Shown here in pieces: positions 11,860 through 63,841 of a DNA stretch of 64,000 nucleotides. The stretch spans positions 124,001 through 188,000 of the IMG/VR virus record IMGVR_UViG_3300009537_002640; one strand, given 5' to 3'. Both the position numbers and the translations under genes were made by a program. The number at the start of each line of letters is the position of its first letter. Within the stretch, counting starts at the first letter, position 1. Below the pieces are notes generated by a model. It did not search any database, had not been told where the DNA came from, and saw only the letters and a list, made by a program, of their open reading frames with translations.

Positions 11860-12870
11860 TCACCATAAGTAGAATAGTAGGTCAATATTAAATGACCACT
11901 GGCTGCCAAAATATGCAAAGGGAGTTCCTGCTGAGGCGCCTATAGCAAAATTAAGCTCTCTGTCAAAGAAGGTAGGATTATATGATATGCCTATCCTTTG
12001 CTCCCATTTCTTAATGTCTTCAAAAGAAAACCCTGTATGGGTATTTATCCCTAAACCATTCCAGTTGAAAAACTCTACACCCAATCCCAACTTAAGATTC
12101 CCACTATCAGGAAATGCAGCAACAGACCCCAACACCACAGGCCGTAGTGTAAACAGGTCCGTCCAATTCCATTCTTCTTCAATTGAGGGTGGGTTTGAGT
12201 AGGTAAAGTCTGAATCTACGATATCAGCCTTCGCATTAGGAATGGGCTCGTATTCGCCTTGTTCGTTCTGTGTAACTTCACGTAAAACGAGGCGGCGAGT
12301 TTGCAGCGAGCCATCTTCTTGTTCGTAGACCTCACCATAGATCTTAAACACTTGCTCACTCTCGAATACTTCATCGCCCTCTTTGAAAATATTGGGGTCC
12401 TTTAGTCGAAACCTCTTAAGAGTATCCTCCCAGTTATAACTGATAATACAATTGTCAGATACACCCTGACATTTATCGCCTTCAGTTTCAACTACTACAG
12501 TTGTTGTACCTCCCTGCAACTGTTGTCGTAAATCAGCTATAGTTCGGTCCATACTCTTAATCTTTAGCTTGTGGTCTTTAACGAACTTATCAAAATCTTT
12601 ATCTCGCTCTTCTTTAGCCTGTTTCCATTTTTCGGCAAGGTCTTCTTGAGTAACTAGTTTTGATTTCATTACTCCAAGTTCGTGTTTAGCTTCTTGTAGC
12701 TCACGTTCTTTATCAGAAAGCTGCCCCTGTACTTGTCTCTGGTATGTTTCCCACTTTTCATTGGTTCTTCTATTTTCACAATCACGGGCCCAGAGACCTC
12801 CACCGAGCATGATTGCCATTAGTGCATATAGGAAGTATTTATTTCCTAAAGCAGTCAATAAAGCTTGCAT
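11860..12870 (-). CDS. Membrane-anchored coiled-coil protein with C-terminal amphipathic beta-strands (spanin-like candidate)
   Basis: N-terminal hydrophobic helix (YFLYALMAIMLGGGLW), about 90-aa coiled coil, about six alternating beta-strands ending in the aromatic FYLW. Confidence 0.5.
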   Translation of the reverse strand: MQALLTALGNKYFLYALMAIMLGGGLWARDCENRRTNEKWETYQRQVQGQLSDKERELQEAKHELGVMKSKLVTQEDLAEKWKQAKEERDKDFDKFVKDHKLKIKSMDRTIADLRQQLQGGTTTVVVETEGDKCQGVSDNCIISYNWEDTLKRFRLKDPNIFKEGDEVFESEQVFKIYGEVYEQEDGSLQTRRLVLREVTQNEQGEYEPIPNAKADIVDSDFTYSNPPSIEEEWNWTDLFTLRPVVLGSVAAFPDSGNLKLGLGVEFFNWNGLGINTHTGFSFEDIKKWEQRIGISYNPTFFDRELNFAIGASAGTPFAYFGSQWSFNIDLLFYLW

Positions 12871-12891
12871 AATCTTTCTCCTTAATCATTC

Positions 12892-22178: not shown

Positions 22179-23891
22179 TTATAAGCCGCTAGGATATTGA
22201 TATATAACATCCGTCTTATCGTGCCTTCTCATACGAAATTGCTGTCTTCCTGAGTCGCCCAAAACCAAAATGTTTCTGGTAACATCCAGCACTTCATACC
22301 TAAATTCCTCAAAGAATTCACCGGTATTCTTATCTCTATTAAATAGTATGATTAAATCTCTGTCTTTTAGTGTAGGAATAGTGATTGTCCATGCTGTCAG
22401 TTCACTTGGGTGTGTAAGTCCTTGGTCTCCTTTGATTTCAAGGTCATCTGTGTATGGATGAACCCTTACCATTATCATTCCAAACACATTACGCCAGTGC
22501 TCTGAAATTGGACGGGTATTGTTATAACGGTCATATCCGCCGTCAAAACCTACACCATAACAATATGCACATCTGGTACGCTGGTGCTCCCGGCGCATAC
22601 TGATACAAGCACAGCGTTTTCCTGTCCATTTTCTCTTCAATAAAATAGCAGGCATTCCGGTTACTTGTAGCTGTAGGTCTAGTCGAGCAAGATTTCTTTC
22701 CTGCAGGTCTAAACCGCGCACACCATTAAATTCGCCGCCTACATAGCTGTTTACACATCGCCCATCCAGCGTGTCTTGTAGGCTGGGGCGATGATATCCT
22801 TTAAAATCGTACGCAGGGAAATCTTCATTCTCAGCATCCGATATAGAAAAATCTGGGGTTATATCGTCGGCATTAGCTGCCCTATAACCATCCTCGTCTA
22901 CATTGTAATCTCCAATAGCGTCGACATTGCGAGGAGTTCCATTATCTTCATGCCACGCCGCCGTATCGTTCAGTATTACAGTATTACCGTCCTCAATACC
23001 TCTAAACAATTGAATGGCTGAACCAATTGCGTGGGTAGAGATTAAAGTAGTGAATGCGCCTCTTCCGGTGTCCTCTATATAGAAGTTCTCGCCATCCTTA
23101 GATTCATATTGGATTACTTCGGAGCCAATATGTAAAAATCCTTTCTCAGGATATCCATTAGTGGTACTAACATTAATAGTTGCCCCGTAAGCATCAATGT
23201 CATTCTCTAGAGTTAAAACCTCTGGGTACTGATATAAATCCTCGCCTATTTGCTCAAGCTGAGTTAAGTCAAAATCGTTAGGGTCGTATTCAACCGCTCT
23301 TACTGCAAAGTATCTTAGTTTACCAGGCGGGACATTGATAACAACCTGGCGGGCTGTAGTAATTGCCCTTGGACCAGAATTAAAAACACCAAATCGAGTA
23401 GATGATACATAAATGTTGTAATGTATTTGTTTATTAGAGTCAGCAGGAACAGCCTCGCCCCAAGTTAGACGAAGCCCCATTCCATTTCCAACGTCTTCAA
23501 TTCTACGCACTCCCACCAAATGCAACCAGGTAGGTTTTTCACGACAGCCAACATGTGCTGATGCTGCTTGCCCACCTGATGCTCCTGATGGAATACCCGC
23601 TGGAGCCATTGTGAAACTATAGCGCTGAGTATTAGAGGTCATACCATCTTCAGCGACCCACTCCCATTGGTCATAATAAACGCCTGCATCTAGTGTTTTT
23701 GGAGAATCCCACGTAGCTTGATAAAAACCAGTGGACAAACGAGTAACTGGCAGTACGGCAATTAAGTTCCCACCAGACGCAGCATCATATATTCTAACCG
23801 CATTCACTGTGAATGGGTCGAACAAAGAGCCGTTCTCGTAGAACTTTATGCCGACATCTATTTCTTGTCCTATTAGACCACTGCGTGCCAT
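22179..23891 (-). CDS. Neck/head-closure-like protein with N-terminal Ig/FN3-like domains and a Cys4 zinc finger
   Basis: 'KRKWTGKRCAC...RCAYCYGVGFDGGY' then beta-strand pattern 'TAWTI..PTLKDRDLII...RYEVLDVTR'; FN3-like 'LTWGEA...YNIYVS...YFAVRA'. Confidence 0.55.
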   Translation of the reverse strand: MARSGLIGQEIDVGIKFYENGSLFDPFTVNAVRIYDAASGGNLIAVLPVTRLSTGFYQATWDSPKTLDAGVYYDQWEWVAEDGMTSNTQRYSFTMAPAGIPSGASGGQAASAHVGCREKPTWLHLVGVRRIEDVGNGMGLRLTWGEAVPADSNKQIHYNIYVSSTRFGVFNSGPRAITTARQVVINVPPGKLRYFAVRAVEYDPNDFDLTQLEQIGEDLYQYPEVLTLENDIDAYGATINVSTTNGYPEKGFLHIGSEVIQYESKDGENFYIEDTGRGAFTTLISTHAIGSAIQLFRGIEDGNTVILNDTAAWHEDNGTPRNVDAIGDYNVDEDGYRAANADDITPDFSISDAENEDFPAYDFKGYHRPSLQDTLDGRCVNSYVGGEFNGVRGLDLQERNLARLDLQLQVTGMPAILLKRKWTGKRCACISMRREHQRTRCAYCYGVGFDGGYDRYNNTRPISEHWRNVFGMIMVRVHPYTDDLEIKGDQGLTHPSELTAWTITIPTLKDRDLIILFNRDKNTGEFFEEFRYEVLDVTRNILVLGDSGRQQFRMRRHDKTDVIYQYPSGL

Positions 23892-24295: not shown

Positions 24296-27200
24296 TTAGT
24301 AGAAATCGTTCCAGGTTGTACCATCCCAACCCTGATGCTTCTTAGTAGATGTATTGAAAATTACCATGCCCTCAATTGGCTCTAGAGCGTCTCTTTCAGT
24401 TGTAGTAAGTCTTGGTGGTAAGAAGACACTCCCAACTGTTAGCTCATTACCCACATCTAGATTGCCATCGATGCCAGAATCTCCACCAACACTAATTCCT
24501 GATGAGAAAGTTGTATAACCGTCAGAAGCTATATTGACTTGCTCTGCACCAGCTGTAATTAATGACAACTCATTTGCGCCAGCAGAACCTATTCCAGTGT
24601 CATAGTCAGACCAAGCAGGAACTAATGTAGGATTAGTTGCACTGGCTGCCTCATTCATTACTGTTCCAGAGCCACTTGTTGCGCCCGATATCTGAGATGC
24701 ATTAATGAAGAATGCATTTATGCCCAGAGCAGCTATTCCTATCGTATCATCTTGAGTTTCATAAAACCCTGTATCGCCATCTCCAAATGATATTGTTGGA
24801 GTAGCAGCATCATTTTCTGAAGGTAGGGATAGTTTAGAACCTGTAACTGGAGCTTGTCCAATACCTATATTGCCAGATGTATCTATGGTTAAATGTGTAT
24901 TAGTTCCTACTGTTGCATTGCTACCAATTTTGAATGCCTCGGAATCATCATTGTCAATACCTACAGTCCAATCCTGTGTAGCAGAAACACTCAGTTCTAG
25001 CTTGGGATCGCCGCCAGCTGATTGTGCCTCAGCCAAAAATACTGAATCGCTTCCAGCAGTAGAATTAGTGTTGTATACTCGAATGTCTGTATAGGCGCCA
25101 TCATTAGCTTGTTGTACATCCCAAGTGGCAGCAGGAGCGGCAGCTATACCGGCATCACCACCAGTAGGGCCAATGCGCATACGAATATTACCACCAGGTA
25201 TACTGCTATCCCCTATTACAAACTCTCCACCCAAAGATCTATCTAGCCCAACATACCATAAATCTCCTCCGCTTAGAGAGATATATGGGTCGCCACCAGA
25301 AGTAGCTAAATCAAGTCTGGCATGACTACTGCTGCCTGAATCCAAATTGGCTATATTGGCAACTACAGATCCTACTGTGGTTTTGCGCATCGACCAATCC
25401 CAAATACCAGTAGTAGTGTGGCCTATTGCAATAAACCCTAGAGAGTCAATACGCATTACCTCACTACCAGCTGTTGATAGTGCTAGTACATCATCAGATG
25501 CCTCCCACCAGCCAGTATCACCGTCACCTAAATTTAATAGAGGAGTTGTTTCGCTTCCGGCGCCTGGTATATTTACAGCTGTAGCCCCACCAGTTTCAGT
25601 GATAGTCAGTCCTTCTACTCCGCCAGCTATTAGAGATATCGCGTCCGCTGCTCCTGAACCCACACCGGTATCCAAATCAAATCTAAAACAATATACTGGA
25701 TTGGTTGCAGTGCTTATTTCGTTACGCATATGCCAGCCACGAGTAGATTGCGCTGCGGCTAAGTCATCAAAACTAGCCCACCATCTAGATGTACCAACGG
25801 AACTGAAGTACACAGCATCGTCGGTAAGTTCGAAGAATCCAGTGTCACCATCACCAAAAGCTATAGTCGGTATCGCCTCGTTGTTCACAGACGGCACTAT
25901 TAAACGACTGCCACCCTGTACTTGTAAATCACCATAAGCATCAATTGTTGGTTGACCCGAGCCACTTGTAATGCGCAATCCTTCAATAGAATTACCTATT
26001 AGGCTTACAGAACCTCCAGCGTCTATGTTTATATCACGAGTACCTAGAGCTTTTACTACACCAGGATCTGGCCATAACACAATGCCCTCTGAATCTACTT
26101 CTGCTTTAACTCCGGAGCCTGTACTAAATCCTAATCTATTGGATCCGATTCTGTATATTCCTGTATCTGTATCAGATAGGAATGAAATGCTAGGCAATAC
26201 AGAGGTTCCATCTGCTACAAATAAACGCCCACCACCCTGAATATTGACATCGCCATAAGCATCTACGGTTGAATTATCGCCTTCAGTATTTCTAGTGAAA
26301 CGCAAAGCCTCTTGCCCATCTACTATAGCAGATAGATTATATATACTTCCACCAGCACCTAGACCGGAATTTATACCGCTACCAGTTCTTACACTAGCAT
26401 TAGTGTCTGATGGCGAACTAGCTGACAAATTACCACCACCAGCTGCAGAACCAAATTCTGATGATGTAAATGACCAAGCATTCGAACCACTTATAGATAC
26501 ACCTATTACGGTATCACTAAATGCATTAAATCCAGTATTTCCAGAGCTGCCGAAACCTATAGTTGGTGAAGAGAACCCTTCGACACCAGTTGTATTCGGA
26601 AATATCAATCGATGATTCAATTGTAGGTTGTTGTTAACCCTATCAAAGTACAAGTCATTATCGCCAGCCAAAGTGCCGGAACTAGTAAAGAATGCCACAT
26701 AGCCATCAGCACCTTCTTCTGCCGTAAGTCCACCACCTCCGCCGTAACCATCTAGAGCCTGTAGAATGACCTGAAATGTTTCTGATAGGTCATCGTTATT
26801 TATGGCTCCAGCTACATTTAGATCTCCATTAACATTTATGAATGGTGACCCAGTAGCATCAATTCTTATGCCCTCAATATTATTGGCGATGAGTGAAAGT
26901 TGACTTGTGCCAGCCGTACCAATACCAGTGCCAGAATCCAATGCATCTGGATTGAACGTAGGGGTGGTAGCAGTGGCATCAAAACCACGCATACTTGGGC
27001 CACCCGAAACAGTAGACGAATAATTGACACCGCTCCACGTAAATCTAGCAAAACCACCAAGAGATATTTGTATAGTGTCATCAGCAGATTCATAGAAGCC
27101 AGAATCACCATCACCAAATGTTATTGTAGGCGTTGATGGAGCATTTATCTGTGGGACAAAAAATCTGCTTCCAGTATTAACATGTAGTCCTGTGCTACTA

Positions 27201-30200
27201 ACATAAGCTCGGGTACTTCCGGCTGTACCAATCTCTAGCTGATTAGTACTATGGTCGAAAATTATGTTTCCGCTCCAAGTTGAATCGGCATCAGCAAAAA
27301 GCAATGCTCCAAACCCAGTAGTGCTAGAGCCTATAGTAATTCCAACATTACTACCACCCTGGACAGTAAGATCATCATACAGAGCAGACGGAGTGCCACC
27401 ATAGCTTGCACCCATAGTAACAGTAGTGGCACTACCTGATTCTGTTATTCGTATGCCTTCAACGCCACCAGCTACCAAGGACAATTGATTAGCAGCAGCT
27501 GAACCTATGCCAGTATCGGTATCGTTTCTACGCGGTACTAGTGTAGGATTGGTAGCGCTAGATATTTCATTCAATATACCTGGACCACCAGTATTGACAT
27601 TTTCCATACCTATGCTAGAAAAATCGAATATCTTACTTCCACCAGTAGCAAGGCTTAGAACATTATCTAGAGCAGCATAAAAGCCAGTATCTCCATCACC
27701 AAAATTTATGGTTGGTGTACTTGCAGTCCCACCAGTTGGAAAATTAACATCAGTTGATCCACCCGATTCAGTAATACGAAATGCCTCAACACCACCAGCT
27801 GCAAAACCCAATATATCTGCACCGGCTCTAAACATACCAGTATCAAAATCTGATGCAGTGGCAAACGAGTATCCAGGAGTAGATGCAGAGCCACCAGCTG
27901 ATGCTACAACGCCACTACTGGAGAACCATCTATCTGATGAATCTATTGTCCATTTCAAATTGCCAGATACGGAAAATGCAAGACTGGTAGAACCAAACGG
28001 AATGCCCATACCAGTTCCAGTGGCTGTATGAAACGAATACCCTGGAGTTGCTACTCCGCCACCACCACCAGCAAATAGACGACCCTCGACATGCAACCCA
28101 TCAGTAGGAGCAGTATCAACACCGGCATCTCCACTACCAATAACTACACCGCCAGCAACATCGAGTTTATTTAGTGGAGCAGTAGTTCCTATACCTAGTC
28201 GGTTATTAGGTCTATCCCAGAATAAATCGTTATCACCAGCTATACTATCACTACCAGTAAAGAAAGCAATATACCCATCAGCACCTTCGGTAGCTGATAT
28301 GCCACCACCTCCGCCTCCACCAGCAGGGAAAGATGCTCCAGTACTAGAATTAAATTCAGCTACTGGGACACCATCATCGCTTAAGCACAAAGAGCCATCT
28401 TCAGTGACACTCCAAGTGAATGTGCGATTCGGCCTTCCTTCAGCAGTAGTAGAAACTATGTGCAATGATTCTGGTCCGAGATACAAGTCACGCCAACGCA
28501 AATCAGGAGTGCCCAATCCCCACATATTATCCGTATGGGGCATCAAGTAACCATCAAAGTATCCATCGCCAGCTACATGCAGCTTAGCTTCAGGAGACCC
28601 AGTGCCAATGCCAACCTCTCCAGTAGTAGATAGCGTCATATTAACAACGCCACCAGAACGGAATCTTAGTTCTTCGTTAACATCGGCTGTTCCATATTGT
28701 ACATAGTTGCCGGAATTTCTTAATAATACGGAGGAGGTGCCTATACGATAGTCAGAAGCTGTATTAATAGCGCCAGTAGTGGTAATTGAATGATTAGCTA
28801 ATGCTACTGTTGGATCTTCGCCAAAACCTACTCTTCTGGCATCTGGACTTATAGATATTACTGGAGTACTACCAGCATATAGTCGCAAGAAACCTTGTGT
28901 GGTCCCGGGTGTCTTTTCAATCTTCCAGGAATAGTCCCGGCCAGTAGTTGTTTCAGCGTCAGTAGATATTATATGTATTGAATCCGTACCAAGATATAAG
29001 TCTCTCCATCGCAAATCAGGAGTACCTAATCCCCACATATCATCGGTACGTGGCATCAAGTAGCCGTCGAAATAACCATCGCCAGCTACATGTAAAAGTG
29101 CATCTGGAGCGTTAGTACTAATACCAACTCTCTGGGTATCTGTTATTCGTATAGCCTCTGTTCCACCAGTAACAAATCCTAATTGATTAATGGTAGCGCG
29201 ATACATACCAGTATCGCCATCATTATTAAAGCCATAACTTACTACACTAGTGCTTCCAAAACCACTCTGTATTCTTGCTCCAGAATCAGCTGCGCTAAAT
29301 ATAGACGAGCTATTGGATATAGACCAAGCAGCCTGATTGTTTGTGGCAAAACGTAATGTTGCTCCGCTAGCATATATTCCAGTTCCATTACTAAACGTAA
29401 TTGCAGGATTGGTTGGTTCATCTAATGTTGGTAGAACTATTTGTTGTGCATAAACAGATCCAGTGATAGTAGAATCTCCAACCAAACTAGTGTCACCATT
29501 TACAGTTACATACCCATCTTCAACACGGATGCTCTCAACTCCACCGGCAATCATAGATAATTGATCAGCACCAGATGAACCAATTCCAGTATTAGAGTCT
29601 GATTTATTAGGGACCAATGTAGGATTTGTAGCTGCAGCATTTTCACGCAAAAGTGCTGGTCCACTAGTTAAATCTGCTTGTATGCTAACATATGTGGTAT
29701 ACTGACCAGCGTCCCATGAGCCTCTAATAGACCCAAGGGTAGAAACAGCCAGGACATCATCACTACTTTCATAAAAGCCGGTATCAGTATCTCCAAAATT
29801 AATCGCAGGAAGACTGGCGGTTCCAGCAGACGAAAATGTAGTGTCTTGACTTATTACAACTGCAGCAGAGTATGCAGCAATTTTAGATCCTCCTCCAACA
29901 ATAATAGCTACCTCTCCTGCGGCCCCGCCAATACCATTGCCGAAAGAACCCTTTCTGGGTATTATTGTCGGATTAGTACTTGATGAAGTCTCGTTTAGAA
30001 GCTGAGCCCCTACACTAAATGCAGAAAAGGAGCCACCTGACATCCTCCATGCTTCTGTACCATTAAAAGTGAACACAAAATCCGTAGTATCTAAATCAAT
30101 ATTGTATGTAGAAGCAGAATCAAAAGATAATAAATCAACGTTAACTATGCTATTGCTGCCCATATCCAAGGAGTTACCCATAGTTAGGGTGCCAGATATT

Positions 30201-33200
30201 GCAGTTTGTCCTATAACCCCTAGTCCTGCACCAACACTTAGGTATCCATCTGTACTAACAGTTATATTACCACTAGATTCAGATATTCTTAACCCCTCTA
30301 CCCCGCCAGCAATTAGGGATAGTTGGTCAGCACCAGCACGGCCAAGCCCAGTATCAAGATCTTGTTTATGCGGAGTGATTGTAGGAACGGTGCTTGTGGC
30401 CTCCACATGTCTTATAACAGGACCGCCCGATAATGCAGAAAGTAAACCAAGTCCGGTATTTATTCCGAAAGCCCATGTGCCACCAGATGTAAATCCAATC
30501 GTGTTTGTAGTAACATGATAAATACCAGTATCAGTATCAGAGGCAAAAGTAAATCCTGGTTCTGATACTGACCCCGGCGAGACGGTTATTTGTCCGGCTA
30601 CTTCCAAAAGCGTAGACGGAGATGTAGTTCCGATACCCAATCGATTATTTGTTCTGTCAAAGAATAAATCATTGTCCCCAGCTATTGAGTTGGCACTAGT
30701 AAAGAATGCTACATATCCATCAGCGCCTTCAGACGCTGTAATGCTGCCACTACCATACCCATCAAGAGCCTGTGTGATAACTTGTAGCGTTTCAGATAAG
30801 TCGTTATTTAATATTGCACCGCCGATGCTTAAATCACCGCCAACACTAGCATCATACAGGAGATTGATATCTGTAGTCCCATCCGCAACTGTTAAAAGAA
30901 GCGTGTCTGTACCACCACCATCACCATCAGTTGTCCAGAGTTCTAATTCGCTAGATGAAGAGTTATATATCCACCAATATCTTGTGATAAATCCAGCACC
31001 AACATTTTGTCCAATACCAAGTCTTCTATCATCATACGCAACCGAATTGCTAATAAAGGTTATGGTAGTGGCGTTAGCCTGAAAAGCAAGAGAATTATGG
31101 TGGTAAAATTGCATATTACCACCAGTGTCTTTTATATAGGTGTCTGCTGTTGTATCTAGATTAAGGATAAATCTAGCATTTTCTTGCATTTGTAAATTAC
31201 CATAGGCATCTATAGTTCCACCACCGCTGCCATCACCAGTAATGCGTAGTCCTTCCCAGCCACCAGCTATAAGTGAAAGTTGATCAGTAGCAGCAGCTCC
31301 AATACCGGTATTTGAATCTATCCACATTGGAAGAAGAGTTGGAACAGTACTGCTGGCATTTACTCTTGAAAGAGCTGGTTGGGAACTATTGGAAGAGCCT
31401 AAGTAACTGCCATTTGCAAGCCAGAGAGAAGTTCCAGCAATTGCTATTCTAAGATTATCATCGGATGTTTCATAAAAACCAGTATCTCCATCACCAAATG
31501 CTATTGTTGGCATAGAAGCATTATTTACAGATGGTACTATAAGCCTACTATTTCCATGTACTTGTAAATCACCATAAGCATCTACTGTTGCTCCAGCTAC
31601 ATCTAAGTCGCCAGTTATTCGTAAACCTTCATAGCCACCAACTATAAGAGATAATTGATCTTGAGTAGGAAACCCACCATGACCAATGCCAGTATTGCTA
31701 TCGAACCTTGATGGTAATAAGGTTGGTGTAGTTGGGCCTGCACCAGTATCAGGAAAACCTGCCGCAGTAGATGTAGACGGACCAGATTGCCCGTTTGATT
31801 GAAATACCCAGCGTCTATTTCCTGCCACTGCTACATCTAGTTCATCATCTACTCTTTCATAGAATCCAGTATCGCCATCACCAAAGGCGATGGTAGGCAT
31901 AGTGGCATCATTAATCTGTGAAACTATTAGGCGACCATTGCCTTGTACCTGCAAATCACCATAAGCGTCTATAGTTCCGCCACTATCACCATTTGGTGTC
32001 ACATACAATAGATAATTGTTAGCCGCAGCGAGCGCTAAACTCCCCAACCCAGTATTTACTATGCCTTCAGACTGATTATGTGTTAGTAACAAATATTCAT
32101 TAGGGTTAACACTAGTGTCATTATTGCTATGTATAATAACCGTAGGATCTGCAAAAGCTCCATGTCCATGATCGACAGCTGTATTTGCGTGAGTGGTGAA
32201 TATCATGCTTTTGGCAGTATCACCAAGTGCCCATACCATTGTTGGTTCTGTTTGCTGAGTAGACCAATCTATGAACACATCATCATCAGAACCAAATGTG
32301 AAATTAACATTATCTTGGGTTACTGGTCTAGCATAAAACCTAGAGATAGCATCAAAATGTACCTCACCATCGACTTCAAGTGCCCCACCTATAATAACAC
32401 TGCCACTTGTAAGACTATGACTAGAACTTGCGCTGGTTCCTAATTGAAGTGCAACAGCGCTATCTGTGATTAGATTGCCATTGAAATCCAGGTCGGTTGT
32501 TCCATCTGTCACTGATAGTAGAAGGGTATCTGTACCTCCGCCATCTCCATCAGTTGTCCATAGCTCAAATTGGGTTCCACCAGAATTATATTCGAACCAA
32601 TAAACCGGGGCTGCTGATACAATACCTACCCCTAGTGGCATATCATTTGATGTTTTTAAGCCAGTTGTAAATGTTGCTGAATTACCGCCAGCAGCTTGAA
32701 AAACATTAGCGCCATTATGTACAAATTGAAGGGTGGAGCCAGTAGAATGAATATAAGTATCAGAATCATCATTGGAATTAAGTATGAGTCGCTGATTATC
32801 TCTTAGACTAATATTACCATCGACAATTAGATTATCTTGTATTCCAACACTATTGTGAACAGCTAAATATCCATCAACTATTAAGTCACCATAAATATTG
32901 GTGACAATTGTGCCACTTTCTGTAATACGTATGCCTTCAACTCCACCCGCAATTAGAGATAAAATATCACCTGTAGTGGTATCTGCACCTAAACCGGTAT
33001 CATTATCTAAACTAAAGGCGTAAACAGGGCTAGTCGTTGATGCGGGCTGGTTTCGCATCTGGGGTCCGTTTGAAGTTGTTCCAGAAAATGCATTTCCTAC
33101 TATTTTGAATCGTGCGCCACCACCCGTAGCAAAACCAATCTGATCAGCTGAAAGATTAAATATACCAGTATTGGGATCAGATATAAATGCTATACCTGGT

Positions 33201-35731
33201 AACGATTGAGAGCCATCTGCCACTAATAATTGCCCAGGAACTCCTACTTCACCAGTATCAGTAATAGACAGATATTCATCAGCAGCTTGTCGTATTCGCA
33301 ATGTGCCTTGCGATGTAACGCCAAAGTTCCAATCTCGCAATTCCCCCACATCAGTTTCATCAGGATTGGTTCTGATATGAAGTGAGCCTGGGCCTAGAAA
33401 TATGTCTTTCCATCGTAAGTCTTCGGTGCCTAATCCGTAAGCATCGTCTTGCACAGGATTCACATAACCATCAACGAGATTTTCTACTGTATTAGATATT
33501 AGATATCCATCTACCTCTAGAACCCCAACTATAAGCCTACCCGTTACAAAAGCGTCACCAGAAACAGAAAGTTCATATTCAGGGTTATCGAAACCTATCC
33601 CTATACGACCATTATCTACATATAATGAGCCTTCTGCAACATGTAATCGTGTTGCAGGAGAAGAAGTTCCTAAGCCAAGGCGATTATTCATTCTATCCCA
33701 ATAGAAGTCATTATCACCAGCAAGAGCCCTGGTTCCAGTAAAAAATGCTACATAGCCGTCAGCACTTTCGGTGGCGGTAGTATATCCATCTAGGTCTTTG
33801 GTTATAGTTTGAAGAGATTCGGTTAGGGCGCTGTTTATTAGGTCTCCACCAACACTTAGGTCACCAGCTATATCAACAGAATTATCGAAAAACGATTGCC
33901 CGCTTACAGCTAAAACATAGGGGGAAATAGTAGCACCACCAATACCCACTCGTTGGAAGTTGTCTATTCTAACTGCCTCGCTGCCACTAGTTATTAGAGA
34001 TATTTGGTTGGTAGTGTTAGCACCTATACCAGTTGTGGGATTATTGCGTCTAGGCAATAGGGTGGGATTCGTGCTAGATGCAGCCTCATTTAGTATAGAA
34101 CCACCTGTTGTTGTGGAACTTTGTATATAGCCAGCACCTATTATCCAGCTTTCGGACCCAGCGAATGTTAAGCTTATAAGGTCATCTGATGATTCATGTA
34201 TTCCAGTGTCGCCATCACCAAACACTATCGTTGGCTCATTTACAGCGGTTCCGCCAGGCACCAATATTCTATGACCAATAACCAAATTATTATTGGCTCG
34301 ATCAAAGTATAAATCATTGTCTCCACCTATAGTACCGTCACCAGTGAAGAAAGCCACATAACCATCCGCCCCTGCTGATGAAGTTACATATCCATCTAGA
34401 CCTTTAACTATAGTTTGTAATGCATCAGAGTGTTGTGTGTAGTGCTCAGATTCAGTAGACACCAGTCCTTGTAAATCAGACGATAGGGCATAACCATCCA
34501 GGGCGTCACGGATTTCCTGGCGCTGTTGTGAGCTATCAACCCAACGCTGGTCTTCTACCGTCGATAAAGCATATCCATCTAAATCCTTAGTTATAGATTC
34601 AATTGCACCAGCATGTTGTTGATAATGCTCTTGTTCTGTTTGATAAATACCCTGTAAGCTAAATGCATATCCGTCAGACGCATCGCGCAAATCCTGCAAT
34701 TGTTGACTACTATCAGACCACCTTTGGTCCTCAATAGAAGTCAGTGCATACCCATCAAGGTCACTTAATATAGTTTGAATGGCGACTGAAACTTGAGTAT
34801 GGTGTTCTTGCTCTGTTTGACCATAGCCATCTAGGTCTTTAAGTATAGTTTGTATGGTCTCAGCAATTTGTTGCTTATGTTCTTCTACAGTTTGAGCCAA
34901 TCCAGTGTCCGAAGAGTATCCGTCCAAGTTGGATATAATTGTTTGAATTGCTTCTGAATGCTGAGAATAGTGTTCTTGTTCTGTAGTAACCAATCCTTGC
35001 AGATCAGTATCTAAAGCATAGCCATCTAGAGAGTCTCTAATCTCTTGTAATTGTTGTGATGAATCAATCCATCTTTGATCTTCCACCACAACAGACGCAT
35101 AACCGTCTAGATCTTTACGAATAGTCTGCACTACATCACTGTGTTGTAAATAATGCTCTAATTCTGTTTGCACTTGTCCCTGTAGGTCAGATGCCAGAGC
35201 ATAACCATCTAATGCTGTTCGTATATCTTGTAATTGTTGTGAGGAATCAATCCAACGTTGATTCTCTATGGTGAGAATTGCATAACCATCTAAATCAGAT
35301 AAAATGATTTGCAATGCTTGTGAAAATTGTGTGTAATGTTCGCTTACAGTTTGATCTGACGCATAACCATCCAAAGCTCCGGGAGGGATTTCTGCTGTGC
35401 CATAACCATCTAGGTCTTTAAGTATAGTTTGGATTGCGCTAGATAATTGAGAATAGTGTTCACTTTCAGTTTGGTCAGTAGCGTATCCGTCTAATGCACC
35501 GCCAAAGTCCACATTAGTTTGGGTAATATCCTTAATGGTTCTTATGCCAGTAGAATCTTTGAAGACAATATTTTTGTCTTCATCGACAGTAATGTATACC
35601 TCGTCGCTACCCAGTCCTAACAGTCCTGCTGGGTTGTCCGTACCAATACCAACATAGCCATCAAGCCTATAAATATCACCCTGACTATTTATGGCCCATC
35701 TGGTAATACCTATAGCAGGAATAGTAGCCAT
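24296..35731 (-). CDS. Giant mosaic tail fibre protein (3811 aa)
   Basis: Recurrent fibre modules ('GIGTxxP..LxVxG', 'PTIxFGDGDTGFYE', 'DTGIG..ADQLSLIAGG.EG.RI') and C-terminal 'PRLTTTERDAL...GMVIFNT....QGWDGTTW'. Confidence 0.75.
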   Translation of the reverse strand: MATIPAIGITRWAINSQGDIYRLDGYVGIGTDNPAGLLGLGSDEVYITVDEDKNIVFKDSTGIRTIKDITQTNVDFGGALDGYATDQTESEHYSQLSSAIQTILKDLDGYGTAEIPPGALDGYASDQTVSEHYTQFSQALQIILSDLDGYAILTIENQRWIDSSQQLQDIRTALDGYALASDLQGQVQTELEHYLQHSDVVQTIRKDLDGYASVVVEDQRWIDSSQQLQEIRDSLDGYALDTDLQGLVTTEQEHYSQHSEAIQTIISNLDGYSSDTGLAQTVEEHKQQIAETIQTILKDLDGYGQTEQEHHTQVSVAIQTILSDLDGYALTSIEDQRWSDSSQQLQDLRDASDGYAFSLQGIYQTEQEHYQQHAGAIESITKDLDGYALSTVEDQRWVDSSQQRQEIRDALDGYALSSDLQGLVSTESEHYTQHSDALQTIVKGLDGYVTSSAGADGYVAFFTGDGTIGGDNDLYFDRANNNLVIGHRILVPGGTAVNEPTIVFGDGDTGIHESSDDLISLTFAGSESWIIGAGYIQSSTTTGGSILNEAASSTNPTLLPRRNNPTTGIGANTTNQISLITSGSEAVRIDNFQRVGIGGATISPYVLAVSGQSFFDNSVDIAGDLSVGGDLINSALTESLQTITKDLDGYTTATESADGYVAFFTGTRALAGDNDFYWDRMNNRLGLGTSSPATRLHVAEGSLYVDNGRIGIGFDNPEYELSVSGDAFVTGRLIVGVLEVDGYLISNTVENLVDGYVNPVQDDAYGLGTEDLRWKDIFLGPGSLHIRTNPDETDVGELRDWNFGVTSQGTLRIRQAADEYLSITDTGEVGVPGQLLVADGSQSLPGIAFISDPNTGIFNLSADQIGFATGGGARFKIVGNAFSGTTSNGPQMRNQPASTTSPVYAFSLDNDTGLGADTTTGDILSLIAGGVEGIRITESGTIVTNIYGDLIVDGYLAVHNSVGIQDNLIVDGNISLRDNQRLILNSNDDSDTYIHSTGSTLQFVHNGANVFQAAGGNSATFTTGLKTSNDMPLGVGIVSAAPVYWFEYNSGGTQFELWTTDGDGGGTDTLLLSVTDGTTDLDFNGNLITDSAVALQLGTSASSSHSLTSGSVIIGGALEVDGEVHFDAISRFYARPVTQDNVNFTFGSDDDVFIDWSTQQTEPTMVWALGDTAKSMIFTTHANTAVDHGHGAFADPTVIIHSNNDTSVNPNEYLLLTHNQSEGIVNTGLGSLALAAANNYLLYVTPNGDSGGTIDAYGDLQVQGNGRLIVSQINDATMPTIAFGDGDTGFYERVDDELDVAVAGNRRWVFQSNGQSGPSTSTAAGFPDTGAGPTTPTLLPSRFDSNTGIGHGGFPTQDQLSLIVGGYEGLRITGDLDVAGATVDAYGDLQVHGNSRLIVPSVNNASMPTIAFGDGDTGFYETSDDNLRIAIAGTSLWLANGSYLGSSNSSQPALSRVNASSTVPTLLPMWIDSNTGIGAAATDQLSLIAGGWEGLRITGDGSGGGTIDAYGNLQMQENARFILNLDTTADTYIKDTGGNMQFYHHNSLAFQANATTITFISNSVAYDDRRLGIGQNVGAGFITRYWWIYNSSSSELELWTTDGDGGGTDTLLLTVADGTTDINLLYDASVGGDLSIGGAILNNDLSETLQVITQALDGYGSGSITASEGADGYVAFFTSANSIAGDNDLFFDRTNNRLGIGTTSPSTLLEVAGQITVSPGSVSEPGFTFASDTDTGIYHVTTNTIGFTSGGTWAFGINTGLGLLSALSGGPVIRHVEATSTVPTITPHKQDLDTGLGRAGADQLSLIAGGVEGLRISESSGNITVSTDGYLSVGAGLGVIGQTAISGTLTMGNSLDMGSNSIVNVDLLSFDSASTYNIDLDTTDFVFTFNGTEAWRMSGGSFSAFSVGAQLLNETSSSTNPTIIPRKGSFGNGIGGAAGEVAIIVGGGSKIAAYSAAVVISQDTTFSSAGTASLPAINFGDTDTGFYESSDDVLAVSTLGSIRGSWDAGQYTTYVSIQADLTSGPALLRENAAATNPTLVPNKSDSNTGIGSSGADQLSMIAGGVESIRVEDGYVTVNGDTSLVGDSTITGSVYAQQIVLPTLDEPTNPAITFSNGTGIYASGATLRFATNNQAAWSISNSSSIFSAADSGARIQSGFGSTSVVSYGFNNDGDTGMYRATINQLGFVTGGTEAIRITDTQRVGISTNAPDALLHVAGDGYFDGYLMPRTDDMWGLGTPDLRWRDLYLGTDSIHIISTDAETTTGRDYSWKIEKTPGTTQGFLRLYAGSTPVISISPDARRVGFGEDPTVALANHSITTTGAINTASDYRIGTSSVLLRNSGNYVQYGTADVNEELRFRSGGVVNMTLSTTGEVGIGTGSPEAKLHVAGDGYFDGYLMPHTDNMWGLGTPDLRWRDLYLGPESLHIVSTTAEGRPNRTFTWSVTEDGSLCLSDDGVPVAEFNSSTGASFPAGGGGGGGISATEGADGYIAFFTGSDSIAGDNDLFWDRPNNRLGIGTTAPLNKLDVAGGVVIGSGDAGVDTAPTDGLHVEGRLFAGGGGGVATPGYSFHTATGTGMGIPFGSTSLAFSVSGNLKWTIDSSDRWFSSSGVVASAGGSASTPGYSFATASDFDTGMFRAGADILGFAAGGVEAFRITESGGSTDVNFPTGGTASTPTINFGDGDTGFYAALDNVLSLATGGSKIFDFSSIGMENVNTGGPGILNEISSATNPTLVPRRNDTDTGIGSAAANQLSLVAGGVEGIRITESGSATTVTMGASYGGTPSALYDDLTVQGGSNVGITIGSSTTGFGALLFADADSTWSGNIIFDHSTNQLEIGTAGSTRAYVSSTGLHVNTGSRFFVPQINAPSTPTITFGDGDSGFYESADDTIQISLGGFARFTWSGVNYSSTVSGGPSMRGFDATATTPTFNPDALDSGTGIGTAGTSQLSLIANNIEGIRIDATGSPFINVNGDLNVAGAINNDDLSETFQVILQALDGYGGGGGLTAEEGADGYVAFFTSSGTLAGDNDLYFDRVNNNLQLNHRLIFPNTTGVEGFSSPTIGFGSSGNTGFNAFSDTVIGVSISGSNAWSFTSSEFGSAAGGGNLSASSPSDTNASVRTGSGINSGLGAGGSIYNLSAIVDGQEALRFTRNTEGDNSTVDAYGDVNIQGGGRLFVADGTSVLPSISFLSDTDTGIYRIGSNRLGFSTGSGVKAEVDSEGIVLWPDPGVVKALGTRDINIDAGGSVSLIGNSIEGLRITSGSGQPTIDAYGDLQVQGGSRLIVPSVNNEAIPTIAFGDGDTGFFELTDDAVYFSSVGTSRWWASFDDLAAAQSTRGWHMRNEISTATNPVYCFRFDLDTGVGSGAADAISLIAGGVEGLTITETGGATAVNIPGAGSETTPLLNLGDGDTGWWEASDDVLALSTAGSEVMRIDSLGFIAIGHTTTGIWDWSMRKTTVGSVVANIANLDSGSSSHARLDLATSGGDPYISLSGGDLWYVGLDRSLGGEFVIGDSSIPGGNIRMRIGPTGGDAGIAAAPAATWDVQQANDGAYTDIRVYNTNSTAGSDSVFLAEAQSAGGDPKLELSVSATQDWTVGIDNDDSEAFKIGSNATVGTNTHLTIDTSGNIGIGQAPVTGSKLSLPSENDAATPTISFGDGDTGFYETQDDTIGIAALGINAFFINASQISGATSGSGTVMNEAASATNPTLVPAWSDYDTGIGSAGANELSLITAGAEQVNIASDGYTTFSSGISVGGDSGIDGNLDVGNELTVGSVFLPPRLTTTERDALEPIEGMVIFNTSTKKHQGWDGTTWNDFY
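34360..35510 (-). repeat. Tandem coding repeats (about 25-35 aa) each ending in LDGY
   Basis: Alternating 'TExEHYxQHSxAIQTIxKDLDGY' and 'EDQRWxDSSQQLQExRxALDGY' units; about 14 units. Confidence 0.9.
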
Positions 35732-36437: not shown

Positions 36438-36902
36438 TTATTCGCCAAGAAAAAACTTGGCTAAAACTAGACCTAACGCCAATAAGCCCGGAACTATAGT
36501 TGCCACAAGCTTTAAGAACCCAAGAGTTTTTTCTCTCTTAAATTCAGCTTCGGTCTTCTTATCCTGATTTACTAGATTTTTTACACCACTAACTCTTTCG
36601 TGTAGTGATTTTTCCATCTCTTTATCGTCTTTAGTATGTTCCTCTAACTCTTTCTCCAAGTCAGATAGGTCTTTCTCCAATAATGCTAGTCGAGTGATAA
36701 TAGATTTTTCTCCATTACCATCTCTAACTACGTGAGACAAATACTGAACTTTTTCCTCTATGCCATCCAGCTTTCCTTTGAGCACAGCCATAGCTGTAGC
36801 ATTCTCTCGCAATTCTCCCAGCAACGTTTGCACTAATGACGTAGTGGCCTGTAAGCTTTTTGCAAGATCTTCAGCGAGCGCATTATTCTCCGAGGTGCTC
36901 AT
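36438..36902 (-). CDS. Coiled-coil protein with C-terminal transmembrane helix (holin/XhlA-like candidate)
   Basis: Long heptad region followed by 'FLKLVATIVPGLLALGLVLAKFF'. Confidence 0.5.
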   Translation of the reverse strand: MSTSENNALAEDLAKSLQATTSLVQTLLGELRENATAMAVLKGKLDGIEEKVQYLSHVVRDGNGEKSIITRLALLEKDLSDLEKELEEHTKDDKEMEKSLHERVSGVKNLVNQDKKTEAEFKREKTLGFLKLVATIVPGLLALGLVLAKFFLGE

Positions 36903-39869: not shown

Positions 39870-40517
39870 TTACTCTCCTATAATCTTATGGTAAACCTTA
39901 CCATCTTCAATTATCAGGTAAGTTCCATCCAGCATTATGCTACCGCTATCATGGATGTGCTTACCGTCCTTATATTGGGTTCCTGTTAAGTGTGTATGTC
40001 CCATAAGGATATTGTCGCCAGGATTCCCAAAATTGTCTATGATTTCCTCTCGTTTTCTTCTGGTTCTTTCTTCGTATAAGGGGTTATCTCTCATCATCGT
40101 CTGAAAGTCTAACTTGAACAAACGATGGCCCCAAGAATGGATATTCGCTAGAATTTTAGAATACCACGCTTGGTCATAAAATGGATACACCTGATGCCCA
40201 TGCAGAGCCAAAAAGTGCTTATCGAATCTATACATATTAAACACTTTAGCGCCAGGAATATAGTGTTGGTCAGCCTTTACTGGGTCGTGATTTCCTGCGA
40301 CCCAGATGACCGGAATATCTCTTGCTATATCGACTATCGCATCTATCACCTTGCTTTCTCTAACTGCTCGACGATAACCTAACATCCAACAGTCCACTAT
40401 ATCACCATTTAGGAGTAGTCTATCATAGTCTTCTTTCTTCAACAACTCAACAATGTCGTCTTCGTTTCTTAGACGTGCATCACCAACATGCAGGTCAGAA
40501 AAGACTAATGTTCTCAT
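39870..40517 (-). CDS. Calcineurin-like metallophosphoesterase (LpxH/UDP-2,3-diacylglucosamine hydrolase-like)
   Basis: All five motifs present: SDLH, GDIVD, GNHD, HGH, GHTH. Confidence 0.85.
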   Translation of the reverse strand: MRTLVFSDLHVGDARLRNEDDIVELLKKEDYDRLLLNGDIVDCWMLGYRRAVRESKVIDAIVDIARDIPVIWVAGNHDPVKADQHYIPGAKVFNMYRFDKHFLALHGHQVYPFYDQAWYSKILANIHSWGHRLFKLDFQTMMRDNPLYEERTRRKREEIIDNFGNPGDNILMGHTHLTGTQYKDGKHIHDSGSIMLDGTYLIIEDGKVYHKIIGE

Positions 40518-43498: not shown

Positions 43499-44076
43499 AG
43501 AGCCCTCCAAACTATAATGCCACTTTGTATATCTCGGCTAGTACTATTATCTGTAGATTTCATTTTGACTTGTAATGATGTATCTATGCACAATGGGTCA
43601 GGCGGCACCCACATCCAACGATTAGGTGCATATTGAAAAATATCAAAATTGCTTGTCGAATTACCGGAGCTACCATAACTATAATAGCCACTGTTACCGC
43701 CGGTTCCTAACTGCATATCCTCTAACTCCTCTAAATCAAATCCATCACCTGTTGGAAACACATCTGTGCCATCAATGGTTACTTGAATATATATGTGGTC
43801 TGAGTCTACCTCAAATAGCAACTTGTAAAATATAGCTGGACCGTTAATAGTATGAACAACATCAAACCCGCTACTGTATTTGGGTAAATCATGATCATCC
43901 AATCGTTCGTATTTGAGGTTTTCTACACACCCTCCTCCATCACTACCAGGAAAAGGCCGCGTTTTGGCAGAGACAAGCACCCTATTAGCATCTATAGCTG
44001 CATCTCTCTCTACACTAATGGGATTCCCATATCCATCAGTAGCTGTAACTGGATTTAATACTACTACTCCGCTCAT
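43495..44076 (-). CDS. Virion structural protein
   Basis: 193 aa, beta-rich, DGY near the N-terminus, coupled to neighbours. Confidence 0.5.
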   Translation of the reverse strand: MSGVVVLNPVTATDGYGNPISVERDAAIDANRVLVSAKTRPFPGSDGGGCVENLKYERLDDHDLPKYSSGFDVVHTINGPAIFYKLLFEVDSDHIYIQVTIDGTDVFPTGDGFDLEELEDMQLGTGGNSGYYSYGSSGNSTSNFDIFQYAPNRWMWVPPDPLCIDTSLQVKMKSTDNSTSRDIQSGIIVWRAL

Positions 44077-61584: not shown

Positions 61585-62193
61585 TTAGCTCCTTGGCCCC
61601 ATATATCCTTGGGGACCATAATTTTTCGGGTCTAGCGATGGGTCTTTTGGAAGAAACTGAAAAGCACCAGCCATCTCTTCACCCTTCTCTCTGGCACCCT
61701 CTTCATTTCCACTAGTAAACATATCGTAAATTTCGCCTATCTTGGTAAAGCCAAAAGCAAACAGTAGATACTTAGCTGCACGCCAAAGATTCTTTAGTAG
61801 TGCTCGTGGACTTATAACATATTTCCATATGAACTTAAGCACCACACTTGCGAACGCTTCCTTTACTATCTGGTTTTCCATAGAACTAGCGATTTTGTTT
61901 ATTCGTTCATCGTTTAGGTTGGCTGTTGCTGGCATTCCAAAAAGCTGTGTAGTAACACCTTGTTCATCGAGCCATCTACCAAAGTCCTCTAACCCATATC
62001 CGTAATTAGATAAAACTTTATCAAGGGCAGTTATCATCATTCCGCTCCAACCGAAAACAGATGGGGCGTATGATATCAATCTAAAAAGATTTTGCCCGGG
62101 GCCTTGATCGGTTCTCCACATACCTTGAACCATTTTCTTTATGCCTTCTGCAACAAATGCTCGTTTTGAAATATATCGCATAGCTTTGTCCAT
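61585..62193 (-). CDS. Putative internal head protein with hydrophobic helices
   Basis: Start reassigned to ATG 62193 (TAATG coupling); motifs ISKRA and IVKEA, each followed by an amphipathic/hydrophobic segment. Confidence 0.55.
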   Translation of the reverse strand: MDKAMRYISKRAFVAEGIKKMVQGMWRTDQGPGQNLFRLISYAPSVFGWSGMMITALDKVLSNYGYGLEDFGRWLDEQGVTTQLFGMPATANLNDERINKIASSMENQIVKEAFASVVLKFIWKYVISPRALLKNLWRAAKYLLFAFGFTKIGEIYDMFTSGNEEGAREKGEEMAGAFQFLPKDPSLDPKNYGPQGYMGPRS

Positions 62194-63830: not shown

Positions 63831-63841
63831 ATAGCTCTCCA

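What the first reader, a model, noticed from the sequence alone, without database searches (positions are those of the whole stretch)
11860..12870. Single protein with inner-membrane anchor, coiled coil and outer-membrane-type beta-strands: possible new unimolecular spanin
Seen: an N-terminal TM helix, a long coiled coil, and about six amphipathic strands (RPVVLGSVAAF, NLKLGLGVEFF, GLGINTHTGFSF, WEQRIGISYN, NFAIGASAGT, WSFNIDLLFYLW) ending in an aromatic residue. It has no DGY although it is flanked by DGY-rich genes. Known: i-spanins are IM-anchored coiled coils; known u-spanins use an N-terminal OM lipid and a C-terminal TM helix; Bam substrates end in an aromatic beta-signal. Inference: an IM-OM bridge of reversed architecture using a possibly oligomeric barrel, or a phage-encoded OM protein for exclusion.
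Basis: inference. Interest (0 to 1): 0.6.

Follow-up and report, generated by a model that had tools for sequence, protein, structure and literature searches.

The report
Membrane-bridging phage lysis protein candidate
This gene of an uncultured giant phage encodes a protein with an inner-membrane anchor at one end and outer-membrane-type beta strands at the other. Its distant relatives sit next to cell-wall-degrading enzymes, so it is probably a new single-chain device for breaking the bacterial outer membrane at lysis; this is untested.

Summary
The ORF is real: window 11860-12870, minus strand, 336 aa. It belongs to a conserved, purely metagenomic phage family of about 150 clusters at 50% identity. 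The family is absent from 50,697 deposited phage genomes and 185,579 prokaryote species genomes.

The observation largely holds. The "long coiled coil" is overcalled. AlphaFold2 gives short broken helices (29-99), then an extended beta-sheet domain without a PDB match (100-235).

In the C-terminal strands the Gly/polar face is conserved and the hydrophobic face is variable. That is the pattern of small outer-membrane barrels, not of soluble ones.

Two new lines support a lysis role:
- The N-terminal ~90 residues of 24 of 53 members give weak hits to Rz-like spanin families.
- Distant homologues (hhalign 96-98.5%) lie beside endolysins in four independent contigs.

Against this, the window gene and its close relatives sit inside a giant fibre-gene operon. 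No localisation or function was tested, and the oligomer prediction gave no verdict.

Best reading (about 0.5): a single-chain, spanin-like outer-membrane disruptor with reversed anchors.

The parts
11860..12870 (-). Gene for the 336-aa protein P0001 (stop codon 11860-11862)
   Evidence: conserved family
12878..12883 (-). Shine-Dalgarno AAGGAG, 8 nt before the ATG. No promoter- or terminator-like site of its own stands above chance, so the gene is read as part of the late polycistronic fibre operon.
   Evidence: SD use is general in this genome (56% of genes against 12% background)
12787..12837 (-). Residues ~12-28: N-terminal hydrophobic signal-anchor, with K11 on the N side. It is not a lipobox: Cys31 is absent in 10 of 53 members and the residues before it do not fit.
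12574..12786 (-). Residues 29-99: charged helical region with invariant Y43, R45, Q46, L51, E55, Q59 and L78. It is modelled as four helices, not one coiled coil. Together with the anchor it gives weak hits to Rz-like spanin PHROGs in relatives.
12166..12573 (-). Residues 100-235: middle domain built on an extended sheet of 13- to 18-residue strands. It carries the motif ISYNWED..RF.L.DPNIF. No PDB match was found (best Z 3.8). The only resemblance is to ESM Atlas models of DUF6549 proteins (TM 0.48).
12448..12471 (-). Cys134 and Cys141, invariant in the 53-member alignment and absent in the most distant subfamily. Candidate periplasmic disulfide (inference).
11863..12165 (-). Residues 236-336: six amphipathic Gly-rich strands modelled as a small closed barrel. 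The Gly/polar face is conserved (G264, G274, N307 invariant; E266, R292, D282, D330, H278). The hydrophobic face is variable. The last strand reads N-x-D/G-L-I-F-Y-L.

Best explanation
The gene most likely encodes a late-expressed, single-chain envelope-spanning lysis protein. It would do the job of a spanin but is built the other way round from the known unimolecular spanin.

Proposed mechanism (inferred):
1. The N-terminal hydrophobic segment acts as an uncleaved signal-anchor in the inner membrane, N-in and C-out.
2. The helical region and the extended beta-sheet domain cross the periplasm through the peptidoglycan mesh.
3. The last ~100 residues insert into the outer membrane as Gly-rich amphipathic beta strands. 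They may form a six-stranded mini-barrel or part of a barrel shared between subunits.
4. When the endolysin removes the wall, the tethers are free to cluster or collapse. They then rupture or fuse the outer membrane and release progeny.

Shown here: the domain anatomy, its conservation pattern, the weak spanin-like profile hits, and the lysis-cassette position of distant homologues.

Not shown: export, outer-membrane insertion, oligomeric state and any lytic activity.
For: (1) Architecture. There is a hydrophobic anchor with K/R on the N side throughout the family. AF2 (pLDDT 82) gives helices, an extended beta domain and six terminal strands.

(2) C-terminal domain.
- It best matches a designed 6-strand barrel (9xzt: Z 9.9, rmsd 2.4, 85 residues aligned).
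- Next come a designed transmembrane barrel (6x9z, Z 5.6) and CarO, NspA, OmpA, PagL and OmpW at Z 4.2-5.0.
- The Atlas search gives OMP_b-brl and PagL clusters at TM 0.59 by query.

(3) Strand faces. The Gly/polar face is conserved (mean column entropy about 0.95 bits, by my own hand tally of the columns printed). The hydrophobic face varies among L/I/V/F (about 1.5 bits, same tally). This is the reverse of a soluble barrel. The strand number is even, so both ends of the domain face the periplasm.

(4) Spanin-like hits. Scanning all 53 members against PHROGs puts Rz-like spanin families on top:
- phrog_739 in 24 members, best E 7e-5.
- phrog_214 in 16 members, best E 1e-6.
- phrog_89 in 8 members.
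- The hits align residues ~9-97 to the start of the profiles.

(5) Lysis-cassette neighbours of distant homologues.
- P0210 starts 8 nt before the stop of an Amidase_2 endolysin (Pfam E 1e-21).
- P0191 is the last gene after fibre-like genes, a Peptidase_M15_3 endolysin (phrog_894, E 4e-31) and two small membrane-protein genes.
- P0211 follows an Amidase_3 endolysin and three small membrane-protein genes.
- P0164 lies 0.2-1.3 kb from a Peptidase_M15_4 gene and a 381-aa membrane-protein gene.
- Homology of these proteins to the family: hhalign 98.5% (P0191), 96% (P0211) and 96.9% (P0210).

(6) No rival outer-membrane factor nearby. No lipobox ORF that could be an o-spanin lies in those cassettes or around the window gene.

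(7) Periplasmic location. The invariant Cys pair fits an oxidising compartment.

(8) Host envelope. The genome encodes a lipoprotein with a classical LTGC lipobox and uses Shine-Dalgarno sites. This is consistent with, though no proof of, a diderm SD-using host.
Against: - The window gene and all seven close relatives examined lie between giant fibre-like genes, not beside an endolysin.
- In the complete 187.7-kb relative G003 the T4-lysozyme-like endolysin is 53 kb away.
- G003 also encodes an unlinked Rz-like TM-plus-coiled-coil protein (154 aa) and a 94-aa lipoprotein. These might form a conventional spanin.
- The spanin PHROG hits are sub-threshold and cover a TM-plus-helix region prone to compositional matches.
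- Six strands are fewer than any known monomeric outer-membrane barrel.
- I could not read model coordinates, so which face points inward is inferred from conservation only.
- Most family members do not end in an aromatic residue.
- The family is unusually well conserved for a lysis protein. It is the second-best match between G000 and G003, which share only 16 BLASTP hits.
- Two 186-187-aa members lack the helical region and seem too short to span a periplasm.
- The host is unknown.
Confidence: 0.5

Rival explanations
1. It is a phage-made outer-membrane or trans-envelope protein with a non-lytic role. Examples are superinfection exclusion, or masking of the receptor so that progeny are not lost on cell debris. 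Lambda Lom and T5 Llp do this kind of job, and both are encoded next to host-recognition genes.
For: The gene sits in the middle of the fibre-like module in the window and in seven close relatives. The C-terminus resembles outer-membrane barrels. That lom and llp lie beside tail or receptor-binding genes is from my own knowledge.
Against: - The gene has no promoter or terminator of its own and is tightly coupled in a late operon.
- Receptor-specific maskers should not be conserved between phages that share almost nothing else.
- An uncleaved inner-membrane anchor plus a periplasmic stalk is not needed for such a role.
- Distant homologues lie in lysis cassettes.
Confidence: 0.15
2. It is a lysis timing or regulatory protein rather than the outer-membrane disruptor. 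It could be a holin or antiholin-type protein with one TM helix and a large periplasmic sensor domain, as in T4 T and RI.
For: The protein has a single N-terminal TM helix, a large periplasmic part with a conserved Cys pair, and a lysis-cassette position in distant homologues. In G003 an 81-aa protein with two hydrophobic segments overlaps its start by 4 nt.
Against: - There is no Pfam hit to the T holin family or any holin family.
- The cassettes already hold two to three small multi-TM proteins that fit holin and antiholin roles.
- This reading does not explain the outer-membrane-type strands with a conserved Gly/polar face.
Confidence: 0.12
3. It is a virion component or a membrane-tethered assembly factor for the giant fibres. 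In that case the hydrophobic helix and the barrel would be protein-protein interfaces, not membrane anchors.
For: Synteny with fibre-like genes is conserved in the core clade. The family is strongly conserved across divergent phages. Gene 22179-23891 of the module hits a baseplate wedge PHROG.
Against: - There is no hit to any structural PHROG.
- The positive-inside pattern at the N-terminus and the invariant Cys pair point to export.
- In G003 and the small-phage relatives the gene is not beside fibres.
- A conserved Gly-rich face opposite a variable hydrophobic face is unusual for a soluble assembly domain.
Confidence: 0.12
4. It is an inner-membrane-tethered pore former. The amphipathic strands would not be pre-inserted by the Bam machinery. 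They would reach and perforate the outer membrane only after the wall is degraded, as beta pore-forming toxins do.
For: The best Foldseek rows are lysenin pore protomers with long hairpins (E 2e-3, TM 0.11). The model has long hairpins in the middle domain. The lysis-cassette context is the same as for the main reading.
Against: The lysenin match is very weak. The six strands are short (8-12 residues) and modelled as a compact barrel with high confidence. The data cannot separate this reading from the main one.
Confidence: 0.08

Closest known systems
Lambda Rz/Rz1-type two-component spanins (i-spanin plus o-spanin)
   Same: N-terminal inner-membrane anchor followed by a charged helical periplasmic region. 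Periplasmic cysteines are present. Several Rz-like PHROG families give weak profile hits to residues ~9-97. Distant homologues occupy the spanin position in lysis cassettes.
   Different: No partner lipoprotein gene is embedded, overlapping or adjacent. The chain continues for 240 more residues into a beta domain and an outer-membrane-type barrel. The window gene is not in a lysis cassette. No hit reaches significance.
T1 gp11-type unimolecular spanins (Kongari et al. 2018, PMC6139136)
   Same: A single polypeptide proposed to touch both membranes, with a beta-rich periplasmic domain.
   Different: The anchors are reversed and of another kind. gp11 has an N-terminal lipoylation signal and a C-terminal TM helix. 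Here there is an N-terminal TM helix, no valid lipobox, no C-terminal TM helix, and beta strands instead of a lipid anchor. The 58 known u-spanins have no periplasmic Cys; this family has a conserved pair. There is no sequence similarity.
Small outer-membrane beta-barrels (OmpA/OmpX/PagL/OmpW/NspA type; lambda Lom among phage-encoded ones)
   Same: Short amphipathic Gly-rich strands in an even number, a polar and Gly interior pattern, aromatic residues at strand ends, and weak structural matches (Z 4-5.6; TM 0.59).
   Different: Six strands rather than eight or more. No cleavable signal peptide. No Pfam match to any OMP family. The barrel is attached to an inner-membrane anchor.
OmpM/SLH-type outer-membrane tethers of diderm Firmicutes, Deinococcus and cyanobacteria (from my own knowledge)
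   Same: A helical stalk joined to a C-terminal outer-membrane barrel in one chain, linking the outer membrane to an inner layer.
   Different: Those are host proteins. They bind peptidoglycan through an SLH domain, have large barrels of 16 or more strands, and stabilise rather than disrupt the envelope. No homology was found.
phiKT gp28 'disruptin' (bioRxiv 10.1101/515445)
   Same: A non-spanin solution to outer-membrane disruption in phages without recognisable spanins.
   Different: gp28 is a small cationic amphipathic peptide, not an anchored multi-domain protein.

Membership tests
Two-component i-spanin (Rz-like) | N-terminal TM helix with the bulk of the protein in the periplasm | tested here: met
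   A hydrophobic segment at ~12-28 is conserved, with K/R on the N side. Topology is inferred, not measured.
Two-component i-spanin (Rz-like) | Partner o-spanin lipoprotein gene embedded, overlapping or adjacent | tested here: not met
   A lipobox scan of all ORFs of 30-35 aa or more found none in or beside the gene, nor in the relatives' cassettes.
Two-component i-spanin (Rz-like) | Significant match to a spanin family profile | tested here: inconclusive
   P0001 itself: phrog_739 at E 0.16. Across the family: 24 of 53 members hit phrog_739 (best 7e-5) and 16 of 53 hit phrog_214 (best 1e-6). All hits cover the TM-plus-helix region.
Two-component i-spanin (Rz-like) | Gene in a lysis cassette with holin and endolysin | tested here: not met
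   The window gene and its close relatives lie in a fibre operon. The feature is met only by distant homologues.
Unimolecular spanin (T1 gp11-like) | N-terminal outer-membrane lipoprotein signal with a lipobox | tested here: not met
   The residues before Cys31 are A-R-D here and mostly R/N-S in relatives. The Cys is absent in 10 of 53 members.
Unimolecular spanin (T1 gp11-like) | C-terminal TM helix | tested here: not met
   The C-terminus is beta strands. No hydrophobic helix is present.
Unimolecular spanin (T1 gp11-like) | Complements an Rz/Rz1 lysis defect | not testable with these tools
   Needs an experiment.
Outer-membrane beta-barrel protein | Even number of amphipathic strands with a hydrophobic outer face and a polar/Gly inner face | tested here: inconclusive
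   There are six strands. The alternation and conservation asymmetry fit. Face orientation could not be read from coordinates.
Outer-membrane beta-barrel protein | At least eight strands in a closed barrel, alone or by oligomerisation | tested here: not met
   The monomer model has six strands. No support for an oligomer was obtained.
Outer-membrane beta-barrel protein | C-terminal beta-signal ending in an aromatic residue | tested here: inconclusive
   The last strand, N-x-D/G-L-I-F-Y-L, fits the polar-x-G-x-x-aromatic-x-hydrophobic pattern. Only 11 of 53 members end in W/F.
Outer-membrane beta-barrel protein | Match to an OMP family profile | tested here: not met
   No Pfam hit. Structural matches are only weak.
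DUF6549 (PF20186) | Match to the family HMM | tested here: not met
   No hit in the whole genome even at E 10. The only link is a TM 0.48 resemblance between predicted models and a feature score of 0.91.
T4 T-type holin | Match to the Phage_holin_T profile | tested here: not met
   Absent from the Pfam hits at E up to 1.

The most novel reading that the evidence does not exclude
This would be a new architectural class of outer-membrane disruptor. It is a single polypeptide anchored in the inner membrane by an N-terminal helix and in the outer membrane by a Bam-assembled (possibly oligomeric) mini beta-barrel. It would be used by uncultured large and giant phages, and by some smaller ones, in place of Rz/Rz1 or gp11-type spanins. 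It would be the first lysis protein with an integral beta-barrel anchor, and the smallest natural outer-membrane barrel unit.
Probability: 0.35. Interest if true: 0.8.

Novelty: new variant of a known kind. Interest (0 to 1): 0.62.

Why it matters
About 13% of phages of Gram-negative hosts have no recognisable spanin (Kongari et al. 2018, PMC6139136). How giant uncultured phages breach the outer membrane is essentially unknown.

If this family is a single-chain bridge with a beta-barrel anchor, three things follow:
- It adds a third spanin architecture.
- It shows that a lysis protein can depend on the host Bam machinery.
- It gives annotators a marker for lysis genes in huge-phage genomes, where almost nothing is named.

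The six-strand unit would also interest people who study the minimum size and assembly of outer-membrane barrels. The claim can be tested directly with a lambda Rz/Rz1 complementation assay and simple fractionation.

Tried and rejected
- Pfam and PHROG scans of P0001: only coiled-coil noise.
- tblastn of P0001, the G003 homologue, P0191, P0211 and P0210 against 50,697 phage records: no match.
- Scan of 185,579 species genomes: no relative.
- Foldseek against PDB with the whole model: nothing at E <= 1e-3.
- Middle domain folded alone and searched against 48,161 chains: best Z 3.8, no fold assigned.
- DUF6549 lead:
  - The resemblance is structural and feature-based only, with no HMM hit and no literature.
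  - The Flavobacterium phage tant8-1 and crAss cr130_1 look-alikes from BFVD could not be fetched, because I had no accession.
- Lipoprotein reading of Cys31: rejected. The lipobox is poor and the Cys is missing in 10 of 53 members.
- Moron reading: no promoter or terminator of its own above chance.
- Bacteroidota host, suggested by DUF6549 and by the closest terminase (Flavobacterium phage Immutovirus): made unlikely by strong Shine-Dalgarno use. Immutovirus and the 484-kb record LR756508 lack the family.
- Search for the endolysin of this genome:
  - No Phage_lysozyme or SLT hit; only sub-threshold PG_binding_1 hits.
  - The record is a fragment (CheckV 25%), so absence means nothing.
  - The small membrane proteins at genome 87.9-88.6 kb turned out to sit in a glycosyltransferase cluster, not a lysis cassette.
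It counts neither for nor against oligomerisation.
- The reads tools were not used.

Full report
**What is there**

The window is bases 124,001-188,000 of a 206,495-bp IMG/VR virus record, which CheckV rates 25% complete. Nearly all 179 ORFs lie on the minus strand.

The finding is a real ORF at 11860-12870 (-), 336 aa. It has an AAGGAG ribosome-binding site. It starts 21 nt after a 2180-aa gene and ends 4 nt before a 1040-aa gene. No promoter- or terminator-like site of its own stands above chance.

Its neighbours are giant proteins without family matches. One gene of the module (22179-23891) hits a baseplate-wedge PHROG.

**Family**

- Pfam and PHROG scans of the protein itself give only coiled-coil noise.
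- The word search finds 73 homologues of about 330 aa at 48-82% identity. All are metagenomic, on contigs up to 481 kb.
- A profile search of 1.84 billion representatives finds only 152 proteins at E <= 1e-3.
- There is no relative in 50,697 deposited phage genomes or in 185,579 prokaryote species genomes.
- The family is therefore confined to uncultured phages.
- It is the second-best conserved protein (33% identity) between this genome and the complete 187.7-kb T4-like genome G003. Those two genomes share only 16 BLASTP hits.

**Anatomy**

AlphaFold2 on the 53-member alignment gives mean pLDDT 82. The elements are:

| Residues | Element |
|---|---|
| 11-47 | helix: hydrophobic anchor ~12-28 plus an extension |
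| 53-59, 75-85, 91-99 | short helices |
| 102-119, 168-184, 190-201, 207-214 | extended sheet of long strands |
| 243-334 | six strands |

Folded alone, that domain finds no PDB fold (best Z 3.8). It resembles only predicted models of DUF6549 proteins (TM 0.48), with no HMM support.

*N-terminus.* Every full-length member has K/R just before the hydrophobic segment, and longer N-tails are K-rich. This favours an N-in, C-out orientation, as in Rz. Cys31 is not a lipobox cysteine, because it is absent in 10 of 53 members. Cys134 and Cys141 are invariant in the alignment, which fits a periplasmic disulfide.

*C-terminal domain, structural matches.*
- A designed six-strand barrel: 9xzt, Z 9.9, rmsd 2.4, 85 residues aligned.
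- A designed transmembrane barrel: Z 5.6.
- CarO, NspA, OmpA, PagL and OmpW: Z 4.2-5.0.
- OMP_b-brl and PagL clusters in the Atlas: TM 0.59 by query.

*C-terminal domain, conservation.* Column statistics show strict alternation. One face is Gly/polar and conserved: G264, G274 and N307 are invariant, and G262, E266, G272, N276, S313 and G315 nearly so. The other face is always hydrophobic but varies among L, I, V and F. A conserved small/polar face with a variable greasy face is what small outer-membrane barrels show, and it is the opposite of soluble barrels.

The strand number is even. The last strand, N-x-D/G-L-I-F-Y-L, fits the usual beta-signal pattern. However, only 11 of 53 members end in an aromatic residue.

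Two limits apply. I could not read the model's coordinates, so the orientation of the faces is inferred. Six strands are also fewer than any known monomeric outer-membrane barrel.

**Evidence for function**

*Spanin-like profile hits.* Scanning all 53 members against PHROGs, the families hit by most members are Rz-like spanins:
- phrog_739: 24 members, best E 7e-5.
- phrog_214: 16 members, best E 1e-6.
- phrog_89: 8 members.
- phrog_1152, phrog_8821 and phrog_4297: fewer members.

These outnumber tape-measure, scaffold and SbcC coiled-coil families. The alignments cover residues ~9-97 and begin at the start of the profiles. This shows architectural likeness to i-spanins. It is not proof of homology.

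*Lysis-cassette position of distant homologues.*

| Homologue | Context |
|---|---|
| P0210 (186 aa) | starts 8 nt before the stop of an Amidase_2 endolysin (Pfam E 1e-21) |
| P0191 (323 aa, 52.9-kb contig) | last gene of the rightward operon, after fibre-like genes, a Peptidase_M15_3 endolysin (phrog_894, E 4e-31), a 76-aa protein and a two-TM protein |
| P0211 (259 aa, 119-kb contig) | follows patatin, an Amidase_3 endolysin, two two-TM proteins, a TM-plus-coiled-coil protein and a 61-aa protein |
| P0203 | syntenic with P0211 |
| P0164 | 0.2-1.3 kb from a Peptidase_M15_4 gene and a membrane-protein gene |

hhalign confirms that these proteins belong to the family: 98.5% over 262 columns (P0191), 96% over the barrel (P0211) and 96.9% over the middle domain (P0210). 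No o-spanin-like lipoprotein ORF lies in those cassettes.

Other remote contexts (P0187, P0212, G003) show no nearby lysin. In G003 an 81-aa protein with two hydrophobic segments overlaps the gene start.

**Evidence against**

- In the window and in seven close relatives the gene always lies between giant fibre-like genes. The order is about 2100-2600 aa, this gene, about 1010-1024 aa, about 1650-1700 aa, about 200 aa, about 258 aa.
- G003's T4-lysozyme-like endolysin is 53 kb away from the family gene.
- G003 also has an unlinked Rz-like protein and a small lipoprotein.
- Two 186-187-aa family members lack the helical part.
- The endolysin of the window's own genome was not found, but the record is a fragment.

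**Host**

The host is unknown. Strong Shine-Dalgarno use argues against Bacteroidota. A phage-encoded lipoprotein with an LTGC lipobox shows only that the host processes lipoproteins.

**Verdict**

The best-supported reading is a spanin-like, single-chain envelope bridge with reversed and novel anchors, at confidence about 0.5. The rivals cannot be excluded without experiments:
- an exclusion or masking outer-membrane protein;
- a lysis regulator;
- a fibre-assembly or virion protein;
- a tethered pore former.

It is not a member of the Rz or gp11 families by their defining features, but it plausibly works like them.

Noticed in passing
whole genome; in the window e.g. 24296-35731 (3811 aa, 33 copies), 44073-44900 (275 aa, 7 copies), 52095-55682 (1195 aa, 7 copies): The tripeptide DGY, often as LDGY[AL], occurs 2.4 times per 1000 aa against 0.21 expected. 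It is concentrated in the giant structural proteins: 57 copies in a 3634-aa protein outside the window. It looks like a repeated structural or modification motif.
   Followed up: partly
genome 85,118-93,506 (outside the window; locus L042): Seven glycosyltransferase genes in a row (GT2 and GT1/GT4 families), with two small membrane-protein genes among them. The phage may glycosylate its own proteins or the host surface.
   Followed up: partly
genome 200,045-200,755 (outside the window; L043:3045-3755, minus strand): A 236-aa protein with a classical lipoprotein signal (LTGC) fused to a trypsin-like serine protease domain (Trypsin_2, E 5e-15). G003 carries a homologue.
   Followed up: partly
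window 36438-36902 (-): A 154-aa protein with 130 residues of coiled coil, a single C-terminal TM helix and no signal sequence. This is a tail-anchored membrane protein of unknown role.
   Followed up: no
window 62193-63842 (-) and 59490-61010 (-): Two ~500-550-aa proteins give sub-threshold PG_binding_1 matches (E 9e-5 and 4e-3). They are possible wall-binding virion or lysis proteins.
   Followed up: partly
L035:2642-3481 and L037:4900-5724: A patatin-like phospholipase gene sits directly upstream of the endolysin in two lysis cassettes that also hold a family member. It may be a lipid-degrading lysis accessory.
   Followed up: no
L013:9642-9887 (G003), also L011:8264-8518: An 81-84-aa protein with two hydrophobic segments and a charged C-terminus overlaps the start of the family gene by 4 nt. 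It is holin-like in form and has no family match.
   Followed up: partly
whole record: All but a handful of the 179 ORFs over 206 kb are on one strand, with a steady negative GC skew across the window.
   Followed up: no
window 39870-40517 (-): A 215-aa metallophosphoesterase / DNA-repair-exonuclease-like protein is embedded among otherwise unannotatable genes.
   Followed up: no
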